Virus record (IMG/VR): IMGVR_UViG_3300024265_000607
Span: 1 to 6,699 of that record
Reading direction: 5' to 3' (one strand)
DNA: 6,699 bases
Within the stretch, counting starts at the first letter, position 1, and the number at the start of each line of letters is the position of its first letter. A program made the translations under genes and the position numbers. The notes under the pieces were generated by a model. The model searched no databases and had not been told where the DNA came from. It saw nothing but the letters and a program-made list of their open reading frames with translations. This document shows, one piece after another, positions 7 through 6,699 of the stretch.

Positions 7-144
7 TTATATAAGATTAATTTTATTTATAATATTTACATTATCATCTATATCTGTTAATCTTGATAATATCATAATTGGAATGAAAATAAATATAAAT
101 ATAATTTCAAATATAAATAATATAATTTCAGTAATTTTTCTCAT
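7..144 (-). CDS. Small single-pass membrane protein, 45 aa (not in ORF track)
   Basis: Manual translation from ATG 144 to TAA 9-7: MRKITEIILFIFEIIFIFIFIPIMILSRLTDIDDNVNIINKINLI. It starts 2 nt after the stop of 147-272 and has a basic N-terminus followed by a hydrophobic stretch of about 20 aa. Confidence 0.6.
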   Translation of the reverse strand: MRKITEIILFIFEIIFIFIFIPIMILSRLTDIDDNVNIINKINLI

Positions 145-146
145 AA

Positions 147-272
147 TTAACTATTTTTCTTATATTTATTTTTCAATTCTTTACATTGAATACATTTTCT
201 TACATCATTAGTTTGATTAACACATAAATCTATTCCTTTAATCCAACAATACTTTAATTTATTTTTTGACAT
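147..272 (-). CDS. Small basic Cys-rich protein, putative zinc-binding, 41 aa (not in ORF track)
   Basis: Manual translation: MSKNKLKYCWIKGIDLCVNQTNDVRKCIQCKELKNKYKKNS, with Cys at 9, 17, 27 and 30. The ATG overlaps the upstream stop (TAATG at 274-270) and AAGGA lies just upstream. Confidence 0.65.
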   Translation of the reverse strand: MSKNKLKYCWIKGIDLCVNQTNDVRKCIQCKELKNKYKKNS

Positions 273-457
273 TACTTATCCTTAATTATGTCAATTACAA
301 ATTTAAATAAATTTACTTGATGATTATTTAATTTAATTATCTGTCTTTTTCTTTTTTTATTTCCATTACTTCTATTGTAATTTATTAATATCTTTAAACC
401 ATTTTTATTATATTGCTGAAGTTTAATTTCCTTAGATATTTTAATCGTTGTTAGCAT
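272..457 (-). CDS. Small basic hypothetical protein, 61 aa, possibly nucleic-acid binding
   Basis: ORF track. Lys/Arg-rich (KKRKR). It overlaps the ATPase 3' end by 17 nt, has an AAGGT SD-like motif upstream, and its stop is coupled to the next ATG. Confidence 0.65.
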   Translation of the reverse strand: MLTTIKISKEIKLQQYNKNGLKILINYNRSNGNKKRKRQIIKLNNHQVNLFKFVIDIIKDK

Positions 458-1151
458 TTTTATTACCTTTTAGTCTTATATAAATATATTTTTCATAAGC
501 TAAATCAATACCATTCATTAATAACTTATCCTTAACTAAATCGTGAGTTATTTTACCGTTTAATTCTGATTTTATCATTTCGGTTAATTCAATAATATAA
601 TCTCTTAATCTTATAGGGTATCTTTTTAATAAACCAAATTCTAATCTGTTCTTTCTTGTTGATTCTACTTTTTCTAAAGTATTATACATTTTAAAATATT
701 GTTTAGCATCAGAATAAAGAAGTGTAATATCTGAATATGATTTATTTTCCTTATCATAAAAAACAAAATGAAAATCATCAACTTCAAAATTTTCTCTATG
801 TTCGCAAAGTATTATAAAATTAACTAATTTCCTAAATCTTTTATCGATTGTAGAAAAATCTGGTGTAGTAATATATATATCTGTAAAAGTTTTCCTTGAA
901 TGATATAAAATACTTGATAAATAAGCATTTAAATAATCTTGACTTGCTCTTGATTCTAACCAACTATATCCTTCATCCATTAAGAGATTTATATTATCTG
1001 GTAAATTAAATAAATCAACAACTTCTAATTCTCTATAATTTACAGAATCAATAAAATAATTGCTCCAAATTTGTTTATTATTAAAATAAGTGAGTAATGT
1101 CATAATTAGAGTTTTACCACTCCCTAAATTACCAAGAATAATAACTAACAT
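441..1151 (-). CDS. Zot/pI-like (FtsK-HerA-related) P-loop ATPase, putative virion morphogenesis ATPase
   Basis: Walker A GNLGSGKT (aa 7-14) at the extreme N-terminus, WSN (aa 29-31), Walker B LLMDE (aa 56-60), SRK (aa 85-87) and ITTPxxxxIDKRFR (aa 94-107). This order matches the Zot/pI family. No TM segment. TAATG coupling with the upstream gene. Confidence 0.85.
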   Translation of the reverse strand: MLVIILGNLGSGKTLIMTLLTYFNNKQIWSNYFIDSVNYRELEVVDLFNLPDNINLLMDEGYSWLESRASQDYLNAYLSSILYHSRKTFTDIYITTPDFSTIDKRFRKLVNFIILCEHRENFEVDDFHFVFYDKENKSYSDITLLYSDAKQYFKMYNTLEKVESTRKNRLEFGLLKRYPIRLRDYIIELTEMIKSELNGKITHDLVKDKLLMNGIDLAYEKYIYIRLKGNKNANND

Positions 1152-1501
1152 TAATCTAATTTTGATGTAAAAGCATTCTCATTATATTCTTTTGAATTAG
1201 AAAATGTAAATGCTTTTATAATTTCAGTTCTACTTTTTCTTTTATAACTTACCATATATTTTAGATAAGTTTCAATATAATTATTTATACATTTACTTGA
1301 ATGTTTTAAACCAATATTTTCTAAATAAATTGCTATTGTTTTTAAACCTGCTAAAGCTTTAGGTTTAAATATATGTGTTTTTAATTCTAAATTTTCTTTA
1401 GCATCAAGTAAATTATTTAATATTTGTTGTAATGTTATTTTATTATCTTTTGATAATACTTTTAAAGGATTATCAAAAATAGGAATATCATCAAGAGACA
1501 T
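1151..1501 (-). CDS. Soluble hypothetical protein, 116 aa, translationally coupled to the ATPase
   Basis: ORF track. AGGGGG SD-like motif upstream (about 1510-1515), 0-nt gap to the upstream gene and 1-nt overlap with the ATPase. Basic motif VSYKRKSRTE near the C-terminus. Confidence 0.8.
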   Translation of the reverse strand: MSLDDIPIFDNPLKVLSKDNKITLQQILNNLLDAKENLELKTHIFKPKALAGLKTIAIYLENIGLKHSSKCINNYIETYLKYMVSYKRKSRTEIIKAFTFSNSKEYNENAFTSKLD

Positions 1502-1903
1502 TTATATTGCCCCCTTAGCAATCCAACCAATTAAACCTCCAACAATACCTCCAATAATTATATACATAAGTAAACTTTTATAATCTGTATTTCCTAATTC
1601 AGAAGTTAATTGTTTAATTATTTTTTTTCTTATAATCATATCTATTATACCTGTATCTACTTTTGAAGTTTTTCTTTTTATTTCAGAAAATAGTAATTGG
1701 TCTTTTGTATTTTTATCTATATAATAAATCTGATTTAATCCTTTACTAAAAGTTCTTTCAGAAGTATCAATAATATATGAATTACCTTTATAACTAATCC
1801 CGTTTTCTGAAACATTGGAAGGATTAAATAATTTTTTTCCTATAATTGTATAAGAATCTAATTCTTTTATTAAAAATACAGCTATATATCTTTTTTTAAA
1901 CAT
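1502..1903 (-). CDS. Tail-anchored membrane protein, 133 aa
   Basis: Basic soluble N-terminal domain and one C-terminal TM helix, LLMYIIIGGIVGGLIGWIA, with stacked GxxxG motifs. Confidence 0.8.
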   Translation of the reverse strand: MFKKRYIAVFLIKELDSYTIIGKKLFNPSNVSENGISYKGNSYIIDTSERTFSKGLNQIYYIDKNTKDQLLFSEIKRKTSKVDTGIIDMIIRKKIIKQLTSELGNTDYKSLLMYIIIGGIVGGLIGWIAKGAI

Positions 1904-1919
1904 TATTATAATCTCATTT

Positions 1920-2219
1920 TTATTTTTTATGATAATAATCTACAGAAGCAATAATCATTAAGGTTGATTGAAATACAAGAAAGAATATTTCAAATATAGG
2001 AGTAAAGGGTTCATGACCGTGAGCAATACTATTCATACCAATTATTAATGAAAAACCATATATTACTATAATTGGTAAAATATCTTTTATAGCTCTATAA
2101 CAATATAACATTAAAATTATTAAAGAAATTATTGTAATAAAATGAAATGTTAATTGACCAATTTCAAAAAATACCTCTATTTCTGTATCTGGAGGGAAAG
2201 GGGGTTGTTGTATATTCAT
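1920..2219 (-). CDS. Three-TM membrane protein, probably 99 aa (start revised from GTG 2237 to ATG 2219)
   Basis: Three hydrophobic segments. GGAGGT at 2235-2230 lies 10 nt upstream of ATG 2219, which follows the upstream stop (2226-2224) by 4 nt. The track's GTG start overlaps that SD motif. Confidence 0.75.
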   Translation of the reverse strand: MNIQQPPFPPDTEIEVFFEIGQLTFHFITIISLIILMLYCYRAIKDILPIIVIYGFSLIIGMNSIAHGHEPFTPIFEIFFLVFQSTLMIIASVDYYHKK

Positions 2220-2223
2220 ATCT

Positions 2224-2670
2224 TTAATTACCTCCACTTATTTTTTTTACTACTCCAATAGAATATGCTACAGTTAACATTATATAAATTAAAGTACCAA
2301 ATAATTCAATACTTACTATTAAATTAAAAGCAAGAAAAGAAAGAACAGCCCATACTCCAGCAAAACCAGTAAGTAAAATAACAATTTTAGCAGATTCAGC
2401 GTTTAATCCACTTCCTACAACTTGAATTCCTGTAAGTAATGCCACTCCTAATACAGTTATAAGTAAGGCTATTCCTGCTAATTCTAAAGCTGAAGTATCT
2501 ATATAAAATAAAACATCTTGAGCTTCTACTACAAAAGTAGTAGTAGAACCGTTTACTATAGCTGTATTATCTACAGCTACAGAAACAACTTGACCAAATA
2601 AATTACCACCTAAAACTAATGAAAATAAACCAATTACAGATAAAATTAATAATGTAGCAGAAATTAACAT
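2224..2670 (-). CDS. Multi-pass membrane protein, 148 aa, putative minor virion protein
   Basis: N-terminal hydrophobic helix, a beta-rich loop with an NGS sequon, then three further hydrophobic helices around a GIQVVGSGL linker. GAGGT at 2685-2681. Confidence 0.8.
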   Translation of the reverse strand: MLISATLLILSVIGLFSLVLGGNLFGQVVSVAVDNTAIVNGSTTTFVVEAQDVLFYIDTSALELAGIALLITVLGVALLTGIQVVGSGLNAESAKIVILLTGFAGVWAVLSFLAFNLIVSIELFGTLIYIMLTVAYSIGVVKKISGGN

Positions 2671-2671
2671 T

Positions 2672-2902
2672 TCAAGACATACCTCTTTTATAAGCTTTAT
2701 TGATTATAATTAAAGTTAAAATAACTAAACACATTATTAAAATCCATAATTCTACTAATCCAGACCAAACAACAAAACCACTAAATATTGTTAGAAATAC
2801 AAAAAAAGTTTCAAAATCTTTAAAAGTAATATATGTCATAAAAAGAGCTAAAAGAAACATAATACTAATACCAAGAATCCAATTTGTATCTGAAATTGCC
2901 AA
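2672..2902 (-). CDS. Three-TM membrane protein, 76 aa
   Basis: TTG start immediately after the TAA of the 994-aa gene, with GAGGT at 2914-2910 (7-nt spacing). Almost wholly hydrophobic with a basic C-terminus. TGA stop. Confidence 0.8.
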   Translation of the reverse strand: MAISDTNWILGISIMFLLALFMTYITFKDFETFFVFLTIFSGFVVWSGLVELWILIMCLVILTLIIINKAYKRGMS

Positions 2903-5887
2903 TTATACAACCTCATTCTTTTTTCTTAATATAAATATACTTGAACTAATAGCAATAACAAAAAATAACCAAATTGGTATAATTTCTGTTATAGCACATA
3001 ATAAAGACATTAGTAAAAATAAAGGCATTATAGATTCTTTTCCTAATCTTAAACCAATTAACATAGTAGGTAATAGTATAATAAGTAAAGGTACTAACAT
3101 TAAAAGTAATGATAATGTAGCTACAGTAATATTAAAATTTACTCCAAAACCAAAAACAATATTAGATATATATCCAGTTGTTATTCCTACTAAACTGTTA
3201 ATATCGTCATCTGTTATAGTAATTATTATTTGATTTACTATTTTTTCTTGAGTTAAAACTGCTGAAGTAGTACTAAAAAATGAAGGTAATTCTAATATAT
3301 TACTCGTATCATCATTGAATCCTACTTGAAAAAATCCTTTTGCTATATTATTTTTATTAGATTGAAAAATAATTGTTCTGTCATTTGTATTAATAGGAGC
3401 AAAAAGAATGAACGATATTTGAATGAATTCTACATTAGTATCATCAGCTTCATGAATAAAAGCAAGTCTATTATTTGAATCAACATAAAAGAAACTTGTT
3501 TCTGAATCTACACCACTATTAATAAAAGTTGGTATTAAAGTAGCTTCACTTTGTATTGCTCTTACACCAGTATTCTTAAATGATGTATATTGAAATGTAT
3601 TATTAAAATTTAACCTAAAAGATACAAGAGAAGTAAAAAAATAATCTTTTTCACGAGTATTAAAAGTAGTAATATCAGAATAGATTTTTATACTTCTTAG
3701 AATTAAATGAGAAGTATCATCTAATATAGTAAAAGTAATATTACCAATTCCATTAAAAGTAAATAAAGGATGTAGAAAAGAAAAATATGTTTTATTAGTA
3801 AAAAATTCAAAATAACCAAATTCATTATTATTACTAACAGAACTAATTAATGAATTTCCATTAATATATACTCCAAGATTATCTAACCAATATACAATAA
3901 CTAATCCTGGTGGTTGTACACTTGTAATAAATTTTACTTTTCCTAATGTATGACTTGTAGAATTTAAAATTGGTATATATATTGAACCAATAAAAGTGGT
4001 GTTAGTACTGAATCTAAATATTGAAATATTATCATTAAAATTAATATATAAATTACAGACATAATCTATATTTGTACCTAAACCACTAAATAAAGTAATT
4101 TGATTACTTCTTACGTTTGGAGCTTTAAATTCAATATCAGTAATTAAATTTCCATCATTATTAAATAAAAGAACTGAAGCATTTTTTGCTCCTACATCAA
4201 AATGATTAAATTCAATATTCCAACTTAGATTAATAATATCTGCTTGTTTATTAAAAACTTTTTCTATTCCAAAAAATTCTTGAGATAATCCCGGACTTGC
4301 TATACCAACACGTCTATTAGAATCTAAAGGATAACCATACTGTATATCAACAAAAGTATCTGTAGTATCTAATATTGTCCAATTACTTATATCTTTGCTA
4401 TCTATATCTCTTAATGTAATTAAATCATCTTTAAAATCAAATTTAAATTTATCCACTTCTTTTATAGATTGAGAAATATCAAGATAAGGAATTAAATTAG
4501 AACCTATAATATATTGTCCTGAAGAACGGAAAACATCATAATATCTAATAGAATCAATATCCCAAACAACACCAACCTCAAAAGTATCTGTAGCAATACT
4601 AAAATATCTTATATATGAAGTTAAAGGATTTAAATCAAAATAATGACCAATTAAATTTGAATCTACATATATAGATACTTTCATAGTAATAAAATTAATA
4701 GTAAAAGAAATATTATACCATACATCAACAGAAATATCATAAATAGGAATAAGAGAACCATTAAAAAAATTTAATTTATTGTTATGAATAATAAGTTGTA
4801 GAGCTATATTTACTCCATCAGAAAATTGAATTTGACATAATTTATCAGCATTAGAAATTCTTGAATAAAAATCAATTAAGGTTTTATGAATAGCAGAAAA
4901 ATTATTTTCAATAGCTACATTTTTATTATTAGGGTCTATTAAACTAATATATTTTCCATCAATAGAATCTGTATTTTCTATATTTGCTATTACTCCAGCA
5001 CCAGATTTTAAATAAGTCATATTTTCATATAAAGGAAATAAACTATTATCAAATTCAGTACCTATGGTAAATTCTTGAAAAGTGAACCCTACTTGACTTG
5101 ATTCAAATAATTTTAAATCCCAACTAAAACCAATAGCATCAATATATACTTTATAATTAGTATCAACTGTATGTGTCTCTACTTTCATTTGAAAAAAAGC
5201 TTCTGATACAAATCTAAAGTCATAAACTCCTAAATTTATGTTATTTAAATAAAATCTATATTCATTAGAACCTAATCCTAAATATCCACCTCCACCAGTT
5301 TCAAAATCAATTCTATAATGATACCATTGATTATCTAATGGAATTGGAGCATTTGGTATAAGTTGATAAGTAATTCCATCATATTGATAAAAATTATCTA
5401 AACTAATAAAAATTAATACACCACCTCCTAAATTATCATCGCTAATAGCTACAAAAGATAAATCTGTGGTATCTGTAGTTAATATCCACATTTCTATAGT
5501 ACCAAAATCTTGTAATTCAAATTCATTAAGAGTAGAAACAACTTCGGTGTTTGATGTATCATCCAGTTCTAATATTTTATCATGATTTAAAAAAGAAGGA
5601 AAAATATTAACAGTCCCACCAGTTTCAATAACCGACCAACCTATAGGATTATTGCCTATAATATCATTTGTAAAAGTATAAGTGGCATTATAAGTATTAG
5701 TATAAATAGATTTACTCCTAAAATTATAACTATTTGTAAAATTAAAAGAATTATCTTGATAATTAGTTATCTCATCAAAAGTAATTGAAATATCAGATTC
5801 TTGAGCTAAATTAATTCTTGGAAGTAAATTAAATAAAATAGAAATAAGAATTAACAAACCAATTATTTTTTTATTTGTTTTATTCAT
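2903..5887 (-). CDS. Large secreted, membrane-anchored beta-rich protein with LamG/concanavalin A-like repeats; putative receptor-binding adhesin or terminal fibre, 994 aa
   Basis: Signal-peptide-like N-terminus (KK plus hydrophobic aa 8-22). LamG-like motifs DNQWYHYRIDF...FYLN and DVWYNISFTIN...IYVD, and repeated domain-end motifs YIDAI, DIDSI and WLDNL. Three TM helices at about aa 921-987, followed by RKK. Confidence 0.8.
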   Translation of the reverse strand: MNKTNKKIIGLLILISILFNLLPRINLAQESDISITFDEITNYQDNSFNFTNSYNFRSKSIYTNTYNATYTFTNDIIGNNPIGWSVIETGGTVNIFPSFLNHDKILELDDTSNTEVVSTLNEFELQDFGTIEMWILTTDTTDLSFVAISDDNLGGGVLIFISLDNFYQYDGITYQLIPNAPIPLDNQWYHYRIDFETGGGGYLGLGSNEYRFYLNNINLGVYDFRFVSEAFFQMKVETHTVDTNYKVYIDAIGFSWDLKLFESSQVGFTFQEFTIGTEFDNSLFPLYENMTYLKSGAGVIANIENTDSIDGKYISLIDPNNKNVAIENNFSAIHKTLIDFYSRISNADKLCQIQFSDGVNIALQLIIHNNKLNFFNGSLIPIYDISVDVWYNISFTINFITMKVSIYVDSNLIGHYFDLNPLTSYIRYFSIATDTFEVGVVWDIDSIRYYDVFRSSGQYIIGSNLIPYLDISQSIKEVDKFKFDFKDDLITLRDIDSKDISNWTILDTTDTFVDIQYGYPLDSNRRVGIASPGLSQEFFGIEKVFNKQADIINLSWNIEFNHFDVGAKNASVLLFNNDGNLITDIEFKAPNVRSNQITLFSGLGTNIDYVCNLYINFNDNISIFRFSTNTTFIGSIYIPILNSTSHTLGKVKFITSVQPPGLVIVYWLDNLGVYINGNSLISSVSNNNEFGYFEFFTNKTYFSFLHPLFTFNGIGNITFTILDDTSHLILRSIKIYSDITTFNTREKDYFFTSLVSFRLNFNNTFQYTSFKNTGVRAIQSEATLIPTFINSGVDSETSFFYVDSNNRLAFIHEADDTNVEFIQISFILFAPINTNDRTIIFQSNKNNIAKGFFQVGFNDDTSNILELPSFFSTTSAVLTQEKIVNQIIITITDDDINSLVGITTGYISNIVFGFGVNFNITVATLSLLLMLVPLLIILLPTMLIGLRLGKESIMPLFLLMSLLCAITEIIPIWLFFVIAISSSIFILRKKNEVV

Positions 5888-5891
5888 AATA

Positions 5892-6044
5892 TTAAAATAT
5901 TCTAATAATAATTAATATAAATGTTAAAATTAAAAATGAATATAATGTAGCTTTAACAATAAGAATAATATCTCTTTTAACTAAATTAGCTTCTATATTT
6001 CCCTTTTCTCTAAGTTTATCTATTTCTAATTCTTTTTCTGTCAT
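5892..6044 (-). CDS. Small C-terminally anchored membrane protein, 50 aa (not in ORF track)
   Basis: Manual translation: MTEKELEIDKLREKGNIEANLVKRDIILIVKATLYSFLILTFILIIIRIF. It fills the gap between the capsid-like gene and the adhesin, with its stop 4 nt before ATG 5887. Confidence 0.7.
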   Translation of the reverse strand: MTEKELEIDKLREKGNIEANLVKRDIILIVKATLYSFLILTFILIIIRIF

Positions 6045-6048
6045 GATT

Positions 6049-6062
6049 AAAAAAATAAAAAA
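6049..6062 (-). terminator. Putative archaeal oligo-T intrinsic terminator after the capsid-like gene
   Basis: The minus strand reads TTTTTTATTTTTTT (T6-A-T7) about 20 nt after a tandem TAA TAA stop, with no GC-rich hairpin in front. Confidence 0.55.
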
Positions 6063-6081
6063 TAGTAATTAATTTTCCTTA

Positions 6082-6321
6082 TTAACTTGAAGTTCTTGGT
6101 AGGAAAATTATTACTACGGCAATAATGGCTATAATAGGTAAGAGAACAGTGAGCAAGGTTAAAACAGATGGGTCTATTACCGCATCTAATCTTTCACCAG
6201 AAGTGGCATTCACTACAACATTTCCCGCATTACCAATTAAACCTAAAGCAATAGGATAAATTACAGCTACAACCATTAATCCTACAGCTAACATTACAAG
6301 AGTACGGATATTATCTCCCAA
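6082..6321 (-). CDS. Putative major capsid protein of spindle-shaped virus type (hydrophobic alpha-helical hairpin), 79 aa
   Basis: Two long hydrophobic helices (about aa 8-29 and 53-74), each with an internal Pro (IYPIA, LLPII), joined by a polar loop containing an NAT sequon (aa 38-40). First gene after the promoter and followed by a terminator. TTG start. The architecture resembles fusellovirus VP1/VP3 and the His1 capsid protein. Confidence 0.7.
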   Translation of the reverse strand: MGDNIRTLVMLAVGLMVVAVIYPIALGLIGNAGNVVVNATSGERLDAVIDPSVLTLLTVLLPIIAIIAVVIIFLPRTSS

Positions 6322-6386
6322 AATTACATCAACTTTTAGAAATGAAAAATTTTTAGTTAAAGTTAATTAAAAGTAAGATACGTTCA

Positions 6387-6402
6387 CTTTTAAACTTTTT
6401 TG
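6387..6402 (-). promoter_or_regulatory. Putative archaeal promoter (BRE + TATA box) for the structural operon
   Basis: Minus strand CAAAAAAG-TTTAAAAG: a purine run directly followed by a TTTAWA box at 6394-6387, in the only sizeable intergenic region and about 65 nt upstream of the capsid-like start. The AT-rich background lowers specificity. Confidence 0.5.
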
Positions 6403-6467
6403 TTAAAAATCCAAATTAAATAAAAATTTTGACCTGATAAAAATTAATTGACATTTTTGTTAAAAAT
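6397..6467. repeat. 14-bp exact direct repeat TTTTTGTTAAAAAT (6397-6410 and 6454-6467)
   Basis: Read directly from the sequence. The unit is quasi-palindromic, and the first copy overlaps the putative BRE. Confidence 0.6.
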
Positions 6468-6698
6468 TTTATTATATTTAATACTACAATCTTTTTCTAT
6501 TAACATTTTTGGAAATAATATTCTAATAGGGCAAATTCTACAACCAGAATGAATAATATTTAAATCATATTCTCTTAATTTATTTTCAAATAATTTGTCA
6601 TAATAATTTCTTGAAAATTTTCTATTTCCTTTTAATAAATCTCGATATGGATAACCTTTAATAATATTTTGGCTTTTATGAAATCTTATATAAGTATT
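6444..6698 (-). CDS. 3' end of a gene truncated by the window edge; possible PAPS reductase (CysH)/DndC-like protein
   Basis: 84 stop-free codons ending at TAA 6446-6444: NTYIRFHKSQNIIKGYPYRDLLKGNRKFSRNYYDKLFENKLREYDLNIIHSGCRICPIRILFPKMLIEKDCSIKYNKIFNKNVN. YPxxD followed by SGCxxCP resembles the C-terminal part of the PAPS reductase family. The PP-loop would lie outside the window. Confidence 0.6.
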   Translation of the reverse strand, partial: NTYIRFHKSQNIIKGYPYRDLLKGNRKFSRNYYDKLFENKLREYDLNIIHSGCRICPIRILFPKMLIEKDCSIKYNKIFNKNVN

Positions 6699-6699
6699 T

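What the first reader, a model, noticed from the sequence alone, without database searches (positions are those of the whole stretch)
441..6402. Apparently complete morphogenesis operon of a spindle-shaped archaeal virus, likely a wyrdvirus-like virus of Asgard archaea
Seen: promoter, hairpin hydrophobic 79-aa protein, terminator, 50-aa TM protein, 994-aa anchored lectin-like protein, four membrane proteins, 116-aa protein and P-loop ATPase, all co-oriented. Established: fuselloviruses, His1 and the Asgard-associated wyrdviruses use a two-helix hydrophobic capsid protein, and wyrdviruses pair it with an ATPase related to filamentous-phage pI and a large adhesin. Inference: this is a probably uncharacterised member of that assemblage that exits by membrane extrusion or budding, since no terminase, portal, HK97 capsid or lysis gene is in the window. 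An Asgard host is suggested by gene content and low GC but is not shown.
Basis: partly seen in the sequence, partly recalled or inferred. Interest (0 to 1): 0.85.

Follow-up and report, generated by a model that had tools for sequence, protein, structure and literature searches.

The report
Wyrdvirus virion-assembly gene block

Summary
Nine co-oriented, tightly packed genes lie on the minus strand. They encode a 79-aa two-helix hydrophobic protein, a 50-aa tail-anchored protein, a 994-aa adhesin with a signal peptide and a membrane anchor, four membrane proteins, a soluble 116-aa protein and a 236-aa P-loop ATPase.

Eight of the nine have collinear BLASTP homologues in Lokiarchaeota virus WyrdV1 (ATPase 42% identity, capsid protein about 40%, adhesin 25% over its full length). 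The ninth has a positional equivalent.

- **Capsid protein:** the family profile finds the His1 capsid protein VP21.
- **ATPase:** its profile matches M13 assembly protein pI (hhalign 97%) but not SSV1 B251, and it has no membrane segment.
- **Adhesin:** a confident AlphaFold model (pLDDT 86) shows four beta-sandwich domains of the LamG/concanavalin-A lectin type and three C-terminal membrane helices.

The window is 100% identical to part of a 14,404-bp contig (Ga0114923_10001865). That contig adds a protein-primed DNA polymerase and imperfect terminal inverted repeats, so it is a near-complete linear genome. It comes from the same Sumatra subseafloor sediment that yielded WyrdV3, V6 and V7, but the preprint read here does not name it.

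An Asgard host is plausible by kinship but not shown. The virus's 22% GC lies about 10 points below the Asgard genomes of the founding study.

Verdict: a new member of a known kind, of modest interest.

The parts
6387..6402 (-). Putative archaeal promoter: a TATA-like box (6387-6394) preceded by an A-rich BRE-like stretch.
   Evidence: The TTTA(A/T)A-type box is aligned and conserved upstream of the capsid gene in six related viruses, including WyrdV1. It lies in the only large intergenic gap of the window, 124 nt. Function is inferred.
6082..6321 (-). Major capsid protein, 79 aa, His1-like two-helix hydrophobic hairpin. It has a TTG start and one NxT sequon in the loop.
   Evidence: 37-65% identical to the capsid proteins of relatives and about 40% to both WyrdV1 capsid proteins. 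A family HMM built without His1 hits His1 ORF21 (VP21) at E 2.9e-4. Two hydrophobic segments. The TTG aligns with the ATG of L015.
6049..6062 (-). Oligo-T tract (T6 plus T7) just after the capsid gene, resembling an archaeal terminator or attenuator.
   Evidence: T6-T11 runs occur at the same place in all six relatives. It lies in the 37-nt gap, the only gap between the module's genes longer than 16 nt. Function is inferred.
5892..6044 (-). 50-aa tail-anchored membrane protein with a charged N-terminal half and a C-terminal membrane segment.
   Evidence: Hydropathy. Positional equivalents of 53-62 aa with the same layout occur in all relatives, and there is a BLASTP match to L015.
2903..5887 (-). 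Adhesin or receptor-binding protein, 994 aa. It has a signal-like helix, four beta-sandwich lectin-type domains (about 31-258, 266-452, 457-680 and 690-914) and three C-terminal membrane helices (918-992).
   Evidence: 25% identity to the WyrdV1 adhesin over its full length, E 1e-51. AlphaFold2 pLDDT 86.1. Foldseek matches reelin repeats, laminin G and neurexin LNS domains, sialidase lectin domains, CBM22, and LamG/ConA-like phage tail proteins. The N-terminal domain matches a region of P0054 that Pfam calls a sialidase-like CBM.
2672..2902 (-). Conserved membrane protein, 76 aa, two membrane segments.
   Evidence: 52% identical to WyrdV1 gene 22 and conserved in seven of the other fetched contigs (L002, L003, L015-L018 and WyrdV1). 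Hydropathy.
2224..2670 (-). Conserved membrane protein, 148 aa, about four membrane segments, acidic. It is the most widely conserved membrane component.
   Evidence: 44% identical to WyrdV1 gene 23. Homologues also occur in Muninn virus, L014, L019, L023 and L024. Hydropathy.
1920..2237 (-). Conserved membrane protein, 105 aa from the GTG start (99 aa from the ATG at 2219), three membrane segments.
   Evidence: Matches WyrdV1 gene 24 and seven relatives. Gene callers disagree on the start. Hydropathy.
1502..1903 (-). Conserved 133-aa protein with a soluble basic N-terminal domain and a glycine-rich C-terminal membrane anchor.
   Evidence: 35% identical to WyrdV1 gene 25 and aligned across 13 sequences. 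Its similarity to SSV1 B277 is limited to the membrane segment (hhalign probability 39%).
1151..1501 (-). Conserved soluble 116-aa protein, all-helical and basic. Its stop codon overlaps the ATPase start codon. Function unknown; proposed partner of the ATPase.
   Evidence: 47% identical to WyrdV1 gene 26. Invariant S85, R88, R91 and E93 motif. 131 homologues in the large protein database. It stays next to the ATPase gene even in distant relatives. AlphaFold pLDDT is only 67 and Foldseek gives no hit.
441..1151 (-). Morphogenesis ATPase, 236 aa, Zot/pI family, with no membrane segment.
   Evidence: Pfam PF05707, 26.5 bits against a cut-off of 20.3. 41.7% identical to the WyrdV1 ATPase. hhalign against M13 pI gives probability 97%, E 8e-11; against SSV1 B251, 8%. 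Best solved structure is 2R2A. Walker A and B are invariant.
7..457 (-). Three further co-oriented small ORFs: 61 aa (basic), 41 aa (Cys-rich, zinc-finger-like) and 45 aa (hydrophobic).
   Evidence: ORFs. The 61-aa and 41-aa ORFs have homologues after the ATPase gene in L003, L015 and L017. Many small Zn-finger proteins are typical of wyrdviruses.
6446..6699 (-). 3' end of a 242-aa gene that runs off the window and lies between the polymerase gene and the capsid promoter in the full genome.
   Evidence: The full ORF is seen in L006 at 3980-4708. It has a weak PP-loop-like match to MnmA, E 0.029, and no Pfam or NCBIfam hit.

Best explanation
The window holds the complete virion-morphogenesis module of a wyrdvirus. 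Wyrdviruses are dsDNA archaeal viruses related to the spindle-shaped His1 and fusellovirus assemblage. This one has a linear genome of about 14.4 kb replicated by its own protein-primed DNA polymerase.

Proposed mechanism:
1. A TATA-box promoter drives high expression of the 79-aa capsid protein. An oligo-T tract after that gene lowers read-through into the downstream genes.
2. The capsid protein inserts into the host membrane as a two-helix hairpin.
3. The 994-aa adhesin is exported through its signal peptide and held by three C-terminal helices. Its four lectin-type domains bind host surface glycans at one tip of the virion.
4. The small membrane proteins (50, 76, 148, 105 and 133 aa) form the membrane assembly platform or minor virion parts.
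5. The cytoplasmic pI-like ATPase has no membrane segment of its own. It probably docks to that platform, together with the 116-aa protein encoded just upstream, and powers assembly and release of particles through the membrane without lysis.

Shown here: homology, synteny, folds, membrane topology and genome type. Inferred: spindle shape, extrusion or budding, the roles of the five conserved proteins, and the Asgard host.
For: - **Synteny:** eight of nine genes are collinear homologues of WyrdV1 genes 18/19 and 21-27. The same order holds in six other low-GC contigs, and partly in Muninn virus.
- **Capsid protein:** the family HMM hits His1 VP21, and the family alignment shows a conserved hairpin.
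- **ATPase:** Pfam Zot; hhalign 97% to M13 pI against 8% to SSV1 B251; the HMM hits M13 pI at E 2e-10; best PDB match is 2R2A. The tree places it with WyrdV1-like sequences.
- **Adhesin:** confident model and lectin/LamG fold matches, including phage tail and receptor-binding proteins.
- **Genome type:** the window is 100% identical to nucleotides 6255-12953 of the 14,404-bp contig Ga0114923_10001865. That contig carries a PF03175 polymerase and terminal inverted repeats. The same repeat test detects the known repeats of His1 and Muninn virus.
- **Independent assembly:** the same virus was assembled at 99.2-100% identity in five datasets.
- **Literature:** the published description of wyrdviruses matches point by point. 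Spindle virions and a His1-like capsid plus pI-like ATPase genome have since been tied to an Asgard enrichment culture.
Against: - No particle, host or activity has been observed for this virus.
- Host evidence is indirect. WyrdV1 has one Lokiarchaeial spacer match. Relatives of the 116-aa protein sit in genomes labelled Promethearchaeota and Lokiarchaeota, but also Thermoplasmatota.
- The virus's GC of 22% is far below the Asgard genomes of the founding study, 32.8 +/- 4.0%.
- The link to fusellovirus capsid proteins is not significant here, and no solved capsid structure was matched by sequence.
- The five conserved proteins have no detectable relatives of known function, so their roles are guesses.
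- The promoter and terminator rest on conservation only.
Confidence: 0.88

Rival explanations
1. It is a filamentous phage-like element (Tubulavirales) of a low-GC bacterium. On this reading the 79-aa protein is a pVIII-like coat, the 994-aa protein is pIII-like, a small membrane protein is pVI-like and the ATPase is pI. This matches the inovirus gene order coat - adsorption protein - membrane protein - pI.
For: The gene order resembles M13 genes VIII-III-VI-I. The ATPase belongs to the Zot/pI family. The adhesin has a signal peptide and a C-terminal anchor like pIII.
Against: The capsid profile shows no similarity to M13 pVIII (probability 0.06%) but hits His1 VP21. The ATPase has no membrane segment and M13 pI is a distant outgroup. 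The full genome is linear, with terminal inverted repeats and a protein-primed polymerase, not a circular ssDNA replicon with a rolling-circle initiator. Eight genes match an archaeal virus. No pIV secretin is present.
Confidence: 0.02
2. It is a pleolipovirus-like membrane-vesicle virus: small membrane protein, large spike and NTPase, with a His2-type polymerase. It would form pleomorphic enveloped particles, not spindles.
For: The layout is similar: membrane protein, anchored spike, membrane proteins, ATPase. The linear genome with a protein-primed polymerase is as in His2, and the polymerase is 24% identical to that of His2.
Against: None of the eight family HMMs hits any His2 ORF. The ATPase profile against the His2 AAA ATPase gives probability 1.9%. 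The capsid protein is homologous to that of the spindle virus His1.
Confidence: 0.04
3. It is a wyrdvirus-type virus, but its host is not an Asgard archaeon. The host would be another very AT-rich archaeon of subseafloor sediment, for example a Thermoplasmatota or DPANN lineage.
For: The GC of 22% (21.6-24% for the whole sister clade) is about 10 points below Asgard genomes. The only hit among 185,579 species genomes is a contig binned with a Thermoplasmatota genome. No spacer match exists for this clade.
Against: The nearest virus with a host link, WyrdV1, is targeted by a Lokiarchaeial spacer and came from a Loki genome bin. Two of the three named relatives of the 116-aa protein are from Promethearchaeota or Lokiarchaeota genomes. 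The Thermoplasmatota contig is a free viral contig at only 34% ATPase identity, so its binning is weak evidence. Viruses are often more AT-rich than their hosts (general knowledge).
Confidence: 0.3
4. It is not a virus but a conserved cellular surface or secretion locus, or a plasmid.
For: There is no classical capsid, portal or terminase gene. The adhesin N-terminal domain also occurs in giant cell-surface-type proteins.
Against: The block is found only on contigs of about 7-17 kb that have viral replication modules and terminal repeats. Only one hit turned up in 185,579 genomes, on a virus-like contig. The capsid protein is homologous to a proven virion protein of His1.
Confidence: 0.02

Closest known systems
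Wyrdviruses (Lokiarchaeota virus WyrdV1, MZ666939; WyrdV2-V7 of Medvedeva et al., preprint 10.1101/2021.07.29.453957)
   Same: The morphogenesis module is the same and in the same order: His1-like capsid protein, small membrane protein, adhesin of about 1000 aa, five conserved genes, then a pI-like ATPase without a membrane segment. Eight of nine genes match by BLASTP. The polymerase plus terminal inverted repeats match the WyrdV2/V3 type. It comes from the same Sumatra sediment sample as WyrdV3, V6 and V7.
   Different: It is only 25-52% identical to WyrdV1 proteins. It has one capsid gene where WyrdV1 has two. Its GC is 22% against 28%. It belongs to a separate, strongly supported ATPase clade of 15 sequences. 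The genome is not among the contigs named in the preprint.
His1 virus (Halspiviridae, AF191796)
   Same: The two-helix capsid protein is homologous. The genome is linear with imperfect terminal inverted repeats and a protein-primed polymerase. There is a large structural protein with a signal peptide and an anchor.
   Different: No other module gene is detectably shared. The ATPase profile found no relative among His1 ORFs. His1 infects a haloarchaeon and has a different composition.
Muninn virus of Candidatus Odinarchaeum (OM716000)
   Same: It shares the capsid protein, an adhesin-like protein, the 148-aa, 133-aa and 116-aa families, and the ATPase (29% identity). It also has the polymerase and terminal repeats.
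   Different: It is much more distant, has a shorter adhesin (597 aa) and lacks detectable 76-aa and 105-aa homologues. Its host is thermophilic.
Filamentous phage assembly ATPase pI (M13 gene I; Zot family PF05707)
   Same: The P-loop ATPase domain is homologous. Its likely role is membrane-associated, non-lytic virion assembly and export.
   Different: It lacks the membrane and periplasmic part of pI. There is no pIV secretin and no pVIII-type coat. The genome is dsDNA and linear.
Fuselloviruses (SSV1, X07234)
   Same: The concept is the same: a small hydrophobic capsid protein, a large terminal adhesin (VP4/C792) and non-lytic release.
   Different: Capsid similarity is not significant here. 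The ATPase is not B251-like. The B277 link is limited to a membrane segment. There is no integrase, and the genome is not circular.

Membership tests
Wyrdviruses | His1-like major capsid protein of about 80 aa with two hydrophobic helices | tested here: met
   About 40% identical to both WyrdV1 capsid proteins. The family HMM hits His1 VP21 at E 2.9e-4. Two hydrophobic segments.
Wyrdviruses | Large receptor-binding adhesin downstream of the capsid gene | tested here: met
   Full-length match to the WyrdV1 adhesin, E 1e-51. Lectin-type fold.
Wyrdviruses | Block of five conserved genes between the adhesin and ATPase genes | tested here: met
   The 76, 148, 105, 133 and 116-aa proteins match WyrdV1 genes 22-26 in order. 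The feature is defined.
Wyrdviruses | pI-like ATPase without a membrane segment | tested here: met
   41.7% identical to the WyrdV1 ATPase.
Wyrdviruses | Small dsDNA genome (20 kb or less) with a variable replication module, either polymerase plus terminal inverted repeats or a rolling-circle endonuclease | tested here: met
   14,404-bp contig with a PF03175 polymerase and imperfect terminal inverted repeats.
Wyrdviruses | Asgard archaeal host (CRISPR spacer match) | not testable with these tools
   No spacer collection is available here. The only evidence is kinship and genome-bin labels of relatives.
Wyrdviruses | Spindle-shaped virion released without lysis | not testable with these tools
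   This is an inference in the literature as well. Spindle particles have been seen on an Asgard culture carrying a related genome type.
Tubulavirales (filamentous phages) | pVIII-type coat protein (single helix, with or without a signal peptide) | tested here: not met
   hhalign against M13 pVIII gives probability 0.06%. Both hydrophobic segments are conserved and of membrane-spanning length.
Tubulavirales (filamentous phages) | Circular ssDNA genome with a rolling-circle initiator | tested here: not met
   Linear contig with terminal inverted repeats and a protein-primed polymerase.
Tubulavirales (filamentous phages) | pI ATPase with its own membrane segment | tested here: not met
   The ATPase domain is homologous, but the protein ends at residue 236 with no membrane segment.
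Fuselloviridae | VP1/VP3-type capsid protein, B251 ATPase, integrase and circular genome | tested here: not met
   VP1 probability 6.5%, VP3 2.6%, B251 8.4%. No integrase is present and the genome is linear. GenBank nevertheless files WyrdV1 under Fuselloviridae.
Halspiviridae | His1-type capsid protein plus polymerase and terminal inverted repeats | tested here: met
   However, no other genes are shared, so this is kinship at a higher rank, not family membership.
Pleolipoviridae | Pleolipovirus spike, membrane protein and NTPase core | tested here: not met
   No HMM hit in His2. ATPase probability 1.9%.

The most novel reading that the evidence does not exclude
The 21.6-24% GC clade to which this virus belongs has at least 15 ATPase lineages and well over a hundred 50%-identity adhesin clusters. 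It may be a separate wyrdvirus lineage whose host is not a typical Lokiarchaeon of about 33% GC.

Its export motor may also be a 'split pI'. In that reading a soluble ATPase works with the adjacent 116-aa protein and the tail-anchored 133-aa protein, and these two replace the membrane part of filamentous-phage pI.
Probability: 0.25. Interest if true: 0.55.

Novelty: new member of a known kind. Interest (0 to 1): 0.3.

Why it matters
[quoted passage not shown] No wyrdvirus isolate is reported in the papers read here.

This work adds a near-complete 14.4-kb genome with its polymerase and terminal repeats, assembled independently in five datasets. It also shows that the adhesin and 116-aa families are far more diverse in metagenomes than the nine published genomes suggest: 807 adhesin-related clusters and 131 relatives of the 116-aa protein. 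A confident structural model of the adhesin is now available.

It also flags that host assignment for the very AT-rich clade is still open. None of this changes the current picture of the group.

Tried and rejected
- **Capsid protein against the phage collection (tblastn):** only a chance hit, because the low-complexity filter masks the protein.
- **Capsid profile against PDB sequences:** no match, so 7XDI and 7ROB were not reached by sequence.
- **Capsid profile against SSV1 VP1 and VP3:** not significant.
- **The GenBank note that WyrdV1 gene 25 is 'B277-like':** hhalign aligns only the glycine-rich membrane segment.
- **The 116-aa protein:** no Pfam or NCBIfam hit. AlphaFold pLDDT is 67 and no Foldseek hit falls below E = 1.
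- **Family HMMs for the seven non-capsid module families against His1 and SSV1:** no hits, including no B251 or His1 hit for the ATPase. The capsid HMM found only His1 VP21.
- **Pleolipovirus reading:** rejected.
- **Inovirus reading:** rejected.
- **Cellular-locus reading:** rejected.
- **NCBI-sourced ATPase relatives:** they proved to be unbinned metagenome contigs with no organism label.
- **Rfam and tRNA scans:** nothing found.
- **The 242-aa upstream ORF:** only a weak PP-loop hint.

Full report
**1. What is in the window**

The 6,699-bp window has 22.7% GC. It is the whole IMG/VR contig IMGVR_UViG_3300024265_000607. All genes lie on the minus strand.

Reading 5' to 3' on that strand, the genes are:
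- the last 84 codons of a gene that runs off the window end;
- a 124-nt gap;
- a 79-aa ORF (6082-6321), followed by a 37-nt gap;
- ORFs of 50, 994, 76, 148, 105, 133, 116 and 236 aa, packed with gaps of -17 to +16 nt;
- three more small ORFs of 61, 41 and 45 aa.

- 79-aa protein: two hydrophobic segments.
- 50-aa protein: one C-terminal segment.
- 994-aa protein: an N-terminal signal-like segment and C-terminal segments.
- 76, 148 and 105-aa proteins: two to four segments each.
- 133-aa protein: a C-terminal anchor.
- 116-aa protein and the ATPase: none.

The ATPase passes the Pfam Zot (PF05707) cut-off and matches PHROG families for M13 protein I-type morphogenesis proteins. No terminase, portal, HK97 capsid or lysis family was found. 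No Rfam family or tRNA gene was found.

**2. What it is**

A tblastn search of the ATPase against 50,697 phage and archaeal virus records gave three hits:
- Lokiarchaeota virus WyrdV1: 41.7% identity, E 2e-49.
- Muninn virus of Odinarchaeum: 30%.
- A Moorella phage: 25%.

BLASTP of all window proteins against the 39 annotated WyrdV1 proteins showed that eight of the nine module genes have homologues in the same order. These are the capsid protein (genes 18/19, about 40%), the adhesin (gene 21, 25% over the full length, E 1e-51), genes 22-26 (35-52%) and the ATPase (gene 27). The 50-aa protein has no BLASTP match in WyrdV1. Every relative nevertheless has a 53-62-aa protein with the same charged head and C-terminal membrane segment at that position.

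The founding description of wyrdviruses lists exactly these features: a His1-like capsid protein of about 80 aa with two hydrophobic segments, an adhesin, a block of five conserved genes, and an ATPase most similar to filamentous-phage pI but lacking a membrane segment.

**3. Relatives and the full genome**

The same module occurs on other contigs from the same metagenome and elsewhere: L002, L003 and L015-L018, with GC of 21.6-24%.

The exact ATPase sequence is also encoded on a 14,404-bp JGI contig, Ga0114923_10001865. The window is 100% identical to its nucleotides 6255-12953.

That contig adds several features:
- A TrmB-like regulator and many small ORFs.
- Imperfect terminal inverted repeats. 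Left 48-71 matches the last 24 nt at 96%, and left 222-304 matches the right end at 85.5%. His1 and Muninn virus give comparable signals in the same test.

It is therefore a near-complete linear genome of the WyrdV2/V3 type.

The same virus was assembled at 99.2-100% identity from five datasets.

Metagenome 3300024265 is Ga0209976. According to the preprint, Ga0209976 and Ga0114923 are Sumatra forearc subseafloor sediments and are the source of WyrdV3, V6 and V7. The preprint kept only contigs longer than 10 kb, and it does not name Ga0114923_10001865.

**4. Tests of the individual claims**

*Capsid protein.* An HMM built from wyrdvirus-type sequences alone finds His1 ORF21 (VP21) at E 2.9e-4, and finds nothing in SSV1. 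hhalign gives 6.5% against SSV1 VP1 and 0.06% against M13 pVIII. The alignment shows a conserved proline in helix 1, an LLP motif in helix 2, and usually an NxS/T sequon in the loop.

*ATPase.*
- Walker A (GxxGSGKT) and Walker B (DE) are invariant in 26 sequences.
- hhalign against M13 pI gives probability 97%, E 8e-11, over 122 columns. Against SSV1 B251 it gives 8%, and against the His2 ATPase 1.9%.
- The best solved structure is 2R2A, E 3e-4. I recall 2R2A as the N-terminal domain of a Zot-like protein of Neisseria; the PDB table lists it only as an uncharacterized protein.
- In a maximum-likelihood tree the window groups with P0002 (85% identity) inside a 15-sequence clade (SH-aLRT 100). 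That clade joins WyrdV1 in a 24-sequence group (SH-aLRT 94). M13 pI and the Moorella protein are long outgroups.

*Adhesin.*
- A search of 1.8 billion representative proteins found 807 clusters at E <= 1e-3 and 239 at E <= 1e-30. These fall into forms of about 1000 aa and about 800 aa.
- With an 84-sequence alignment, AlphaFold2 gave pLDDT 86.1 and pTM 0.66. The model has a signal helix, four all-beta domains and three C-terminal helices.
- Foldseek matched reelin repeats, laminin G and neurexin LNS domains, sialidase lectin domains and CBM22 in the PDB.
- Among viral models it matched LamG/ConA-like proteins, tail fibres and tip attachment proteins.
- The N-terminal domain is also repeated in giant proteins of 2,000-4,900 aa. 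In one of these, Pfam calls the matching region a sialidase-like carbohydrate-binding module.
- 'Lectin-like' is therefore supported at fold level. The ligand is unknown.

*Promoter and terminator.* A TATA-like box (6387-6394) with an A-rich stretch before it is conserved in six viruses. All six have T6-T11 runs right after the capsid gene. T runs are common in this AT-rich DNA (14 on the coding strand), so it is the conserved position that carries the argument.

**5. Mechanism**

The best-supported reading follows the literature:
- The hairpin capsid protein accumulates in the membrane.
- The adhesin is exported and anchored.
- The pI-like ATPase drives non-lytic assembly and release.

I add one hypothesis, marked as inference. 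The ATPase has lost, or never had, the membrane part of pI. The 116-aa gene overlaps the ATPase start codon and stays next to it even in distant relatives. The 133-aa protein is tail-anchored. These two may therefore tether the motor to the membrane platform. Nothing tested here confirms this, and the 116-aa model is of low confidence with no fold match.

**6. Host**

An archaeal virus is well supported. An Asgard host is plausible but not shown.

In favour:
- WyrdV1 has a Lokiarchaeial spacer match and came from a Loki genome bin.
- Relatives of the 116-aa protein are labelled Promethearchaeota and Lokiarchaeota.
- A later study tied a spindle virus with the same capsid and ATPase pair to an Asgard enrichment culture.
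- A cold-seep relative was assigned to Asgard archaea by spacer matching.

Against, or open:
- The virus's GC of 22% is far below the 32.8 +/- 4.0% of Asgard genomes in the founding study.
- The only hit in 185,579 species genomes is a free viral contig binned with a Thermoplasmatota genome.

**7. Verdict**

The object is a new member of a known kind: an unnamed, near-complete wyrdvirus genome from a sample that already yielded published wyrdviruses.

Noticed in passing
L005 (Muninn virus OM716000) 8031-8720, minus strand: Muninn virus has an unannotated ORF of about 216-230 aa homologous to the wyrdvirus ATPase (29-30% identity, E 6e-19). It lies in the unannotated gap after the polymerase gene, and its 3' part overlaps the polymerase 3' end on the opposite strand. 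Muninn virus also has homologues of the 148, 133 and 116-aa proteins that are annotated only as hypothetical.
   Followed up: partly
window 6446-6699 (-); full ORF at L006:3980-4708: The gene cut by the window end encodes a 242-aa protein with an SGGxxS PP-loop-like motif and a C-terminal Cys pair. It weakly resembles tRNA 2-thiouridylase MnmA (E 0.029). It has no Pfam or NCBIfam hit.
   Followed up: partly
Ga0114923_10001865 ends (L010 and L006 termini): The terminal stretches of about 100 nt of the 14.4-kb genome look visibly G+C-rich against a 22% GC genome; this was judged by eye and not measured. The inverted repeats are imperfect and offset by about 47 nt, so the right end is probably incomplete.
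   Followed up: partly
L014 (JAWOGM010000025, Thermoplasmatota genome bin), whole 14,113-bp contig: This is a distant relative: capsid protein, a 740-aa adhesin-like protein, the 148, 133 and 116-aa families, ATPase at 34% identity, and its own protein-primed polymerase. It has a rearranged gene order and 35% GC. It shows no cellular genes or tRNA genes, so it is either a mis-binned viral contig or a hint that this assemblage extends beyond Asgard archaea.
   Followed up: partly
L031 (Moorella phage MCACPph1, OR602863) 5989-6627: A bacterial (Moorella) 20-kb 'phage' encodes a 212-aa pI-like ATPase that the wyrdvirus ATPase HMM hits at E 3e-25. It is shorter than M13 pI (348 aa), and a 115-aa ORF abuts its start. 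None of the other wyrdvirus families was found there.
   Followed up: partly
window 2903-5887 (adhesin residues about 60-260); P0040, P0054 and others: The adhesin N-terminal lectin-type domain is shared, at 28-37% identity over the matched stretches, with giant proteins of 2,000-4,900 aa. These carry PKD domains, beta-propeller repeats and a sialidase-like CBM, which suggests domain exchange between viral adhesins and cell-surface proteins. An adhesin form of about 800 aa lacks the second domain.
   Followed up: partly
L003 1-496: A sister contig from the same sample carries two tandem capsid paralogues, whereas the window virus has one. This matches the 'one or two capsid paralogues' noted for wyrdviruses.
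   Followed up: no
window 6394-6410 and 6451-6467: A 17-nt direct repeat (94% identical, copies 57 nt apart) lies upstream of the capsid gene, and one copy overlaps the start of the TATA-like box and the A-rich stretch before it. It could be a regulator-binding site or a duplicated promoter element.
   Followed up: no
L007, L008, L012, L013 against Ga0114923_10001865: Independent assemblies of this virus break at recurring positions, about 1838, 6100-6500 and 13,060. This suggests local repeats or strain variation at those points.
   Followed up: no
L004 (MZ666939) record header: GenBank files WyrdV1 under Fuselloviridae. The tests here find no significant similarity to the SSV1 capsid protein or B251, and the only link to B277 is a shared membrane segment.
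   Followed up: yes
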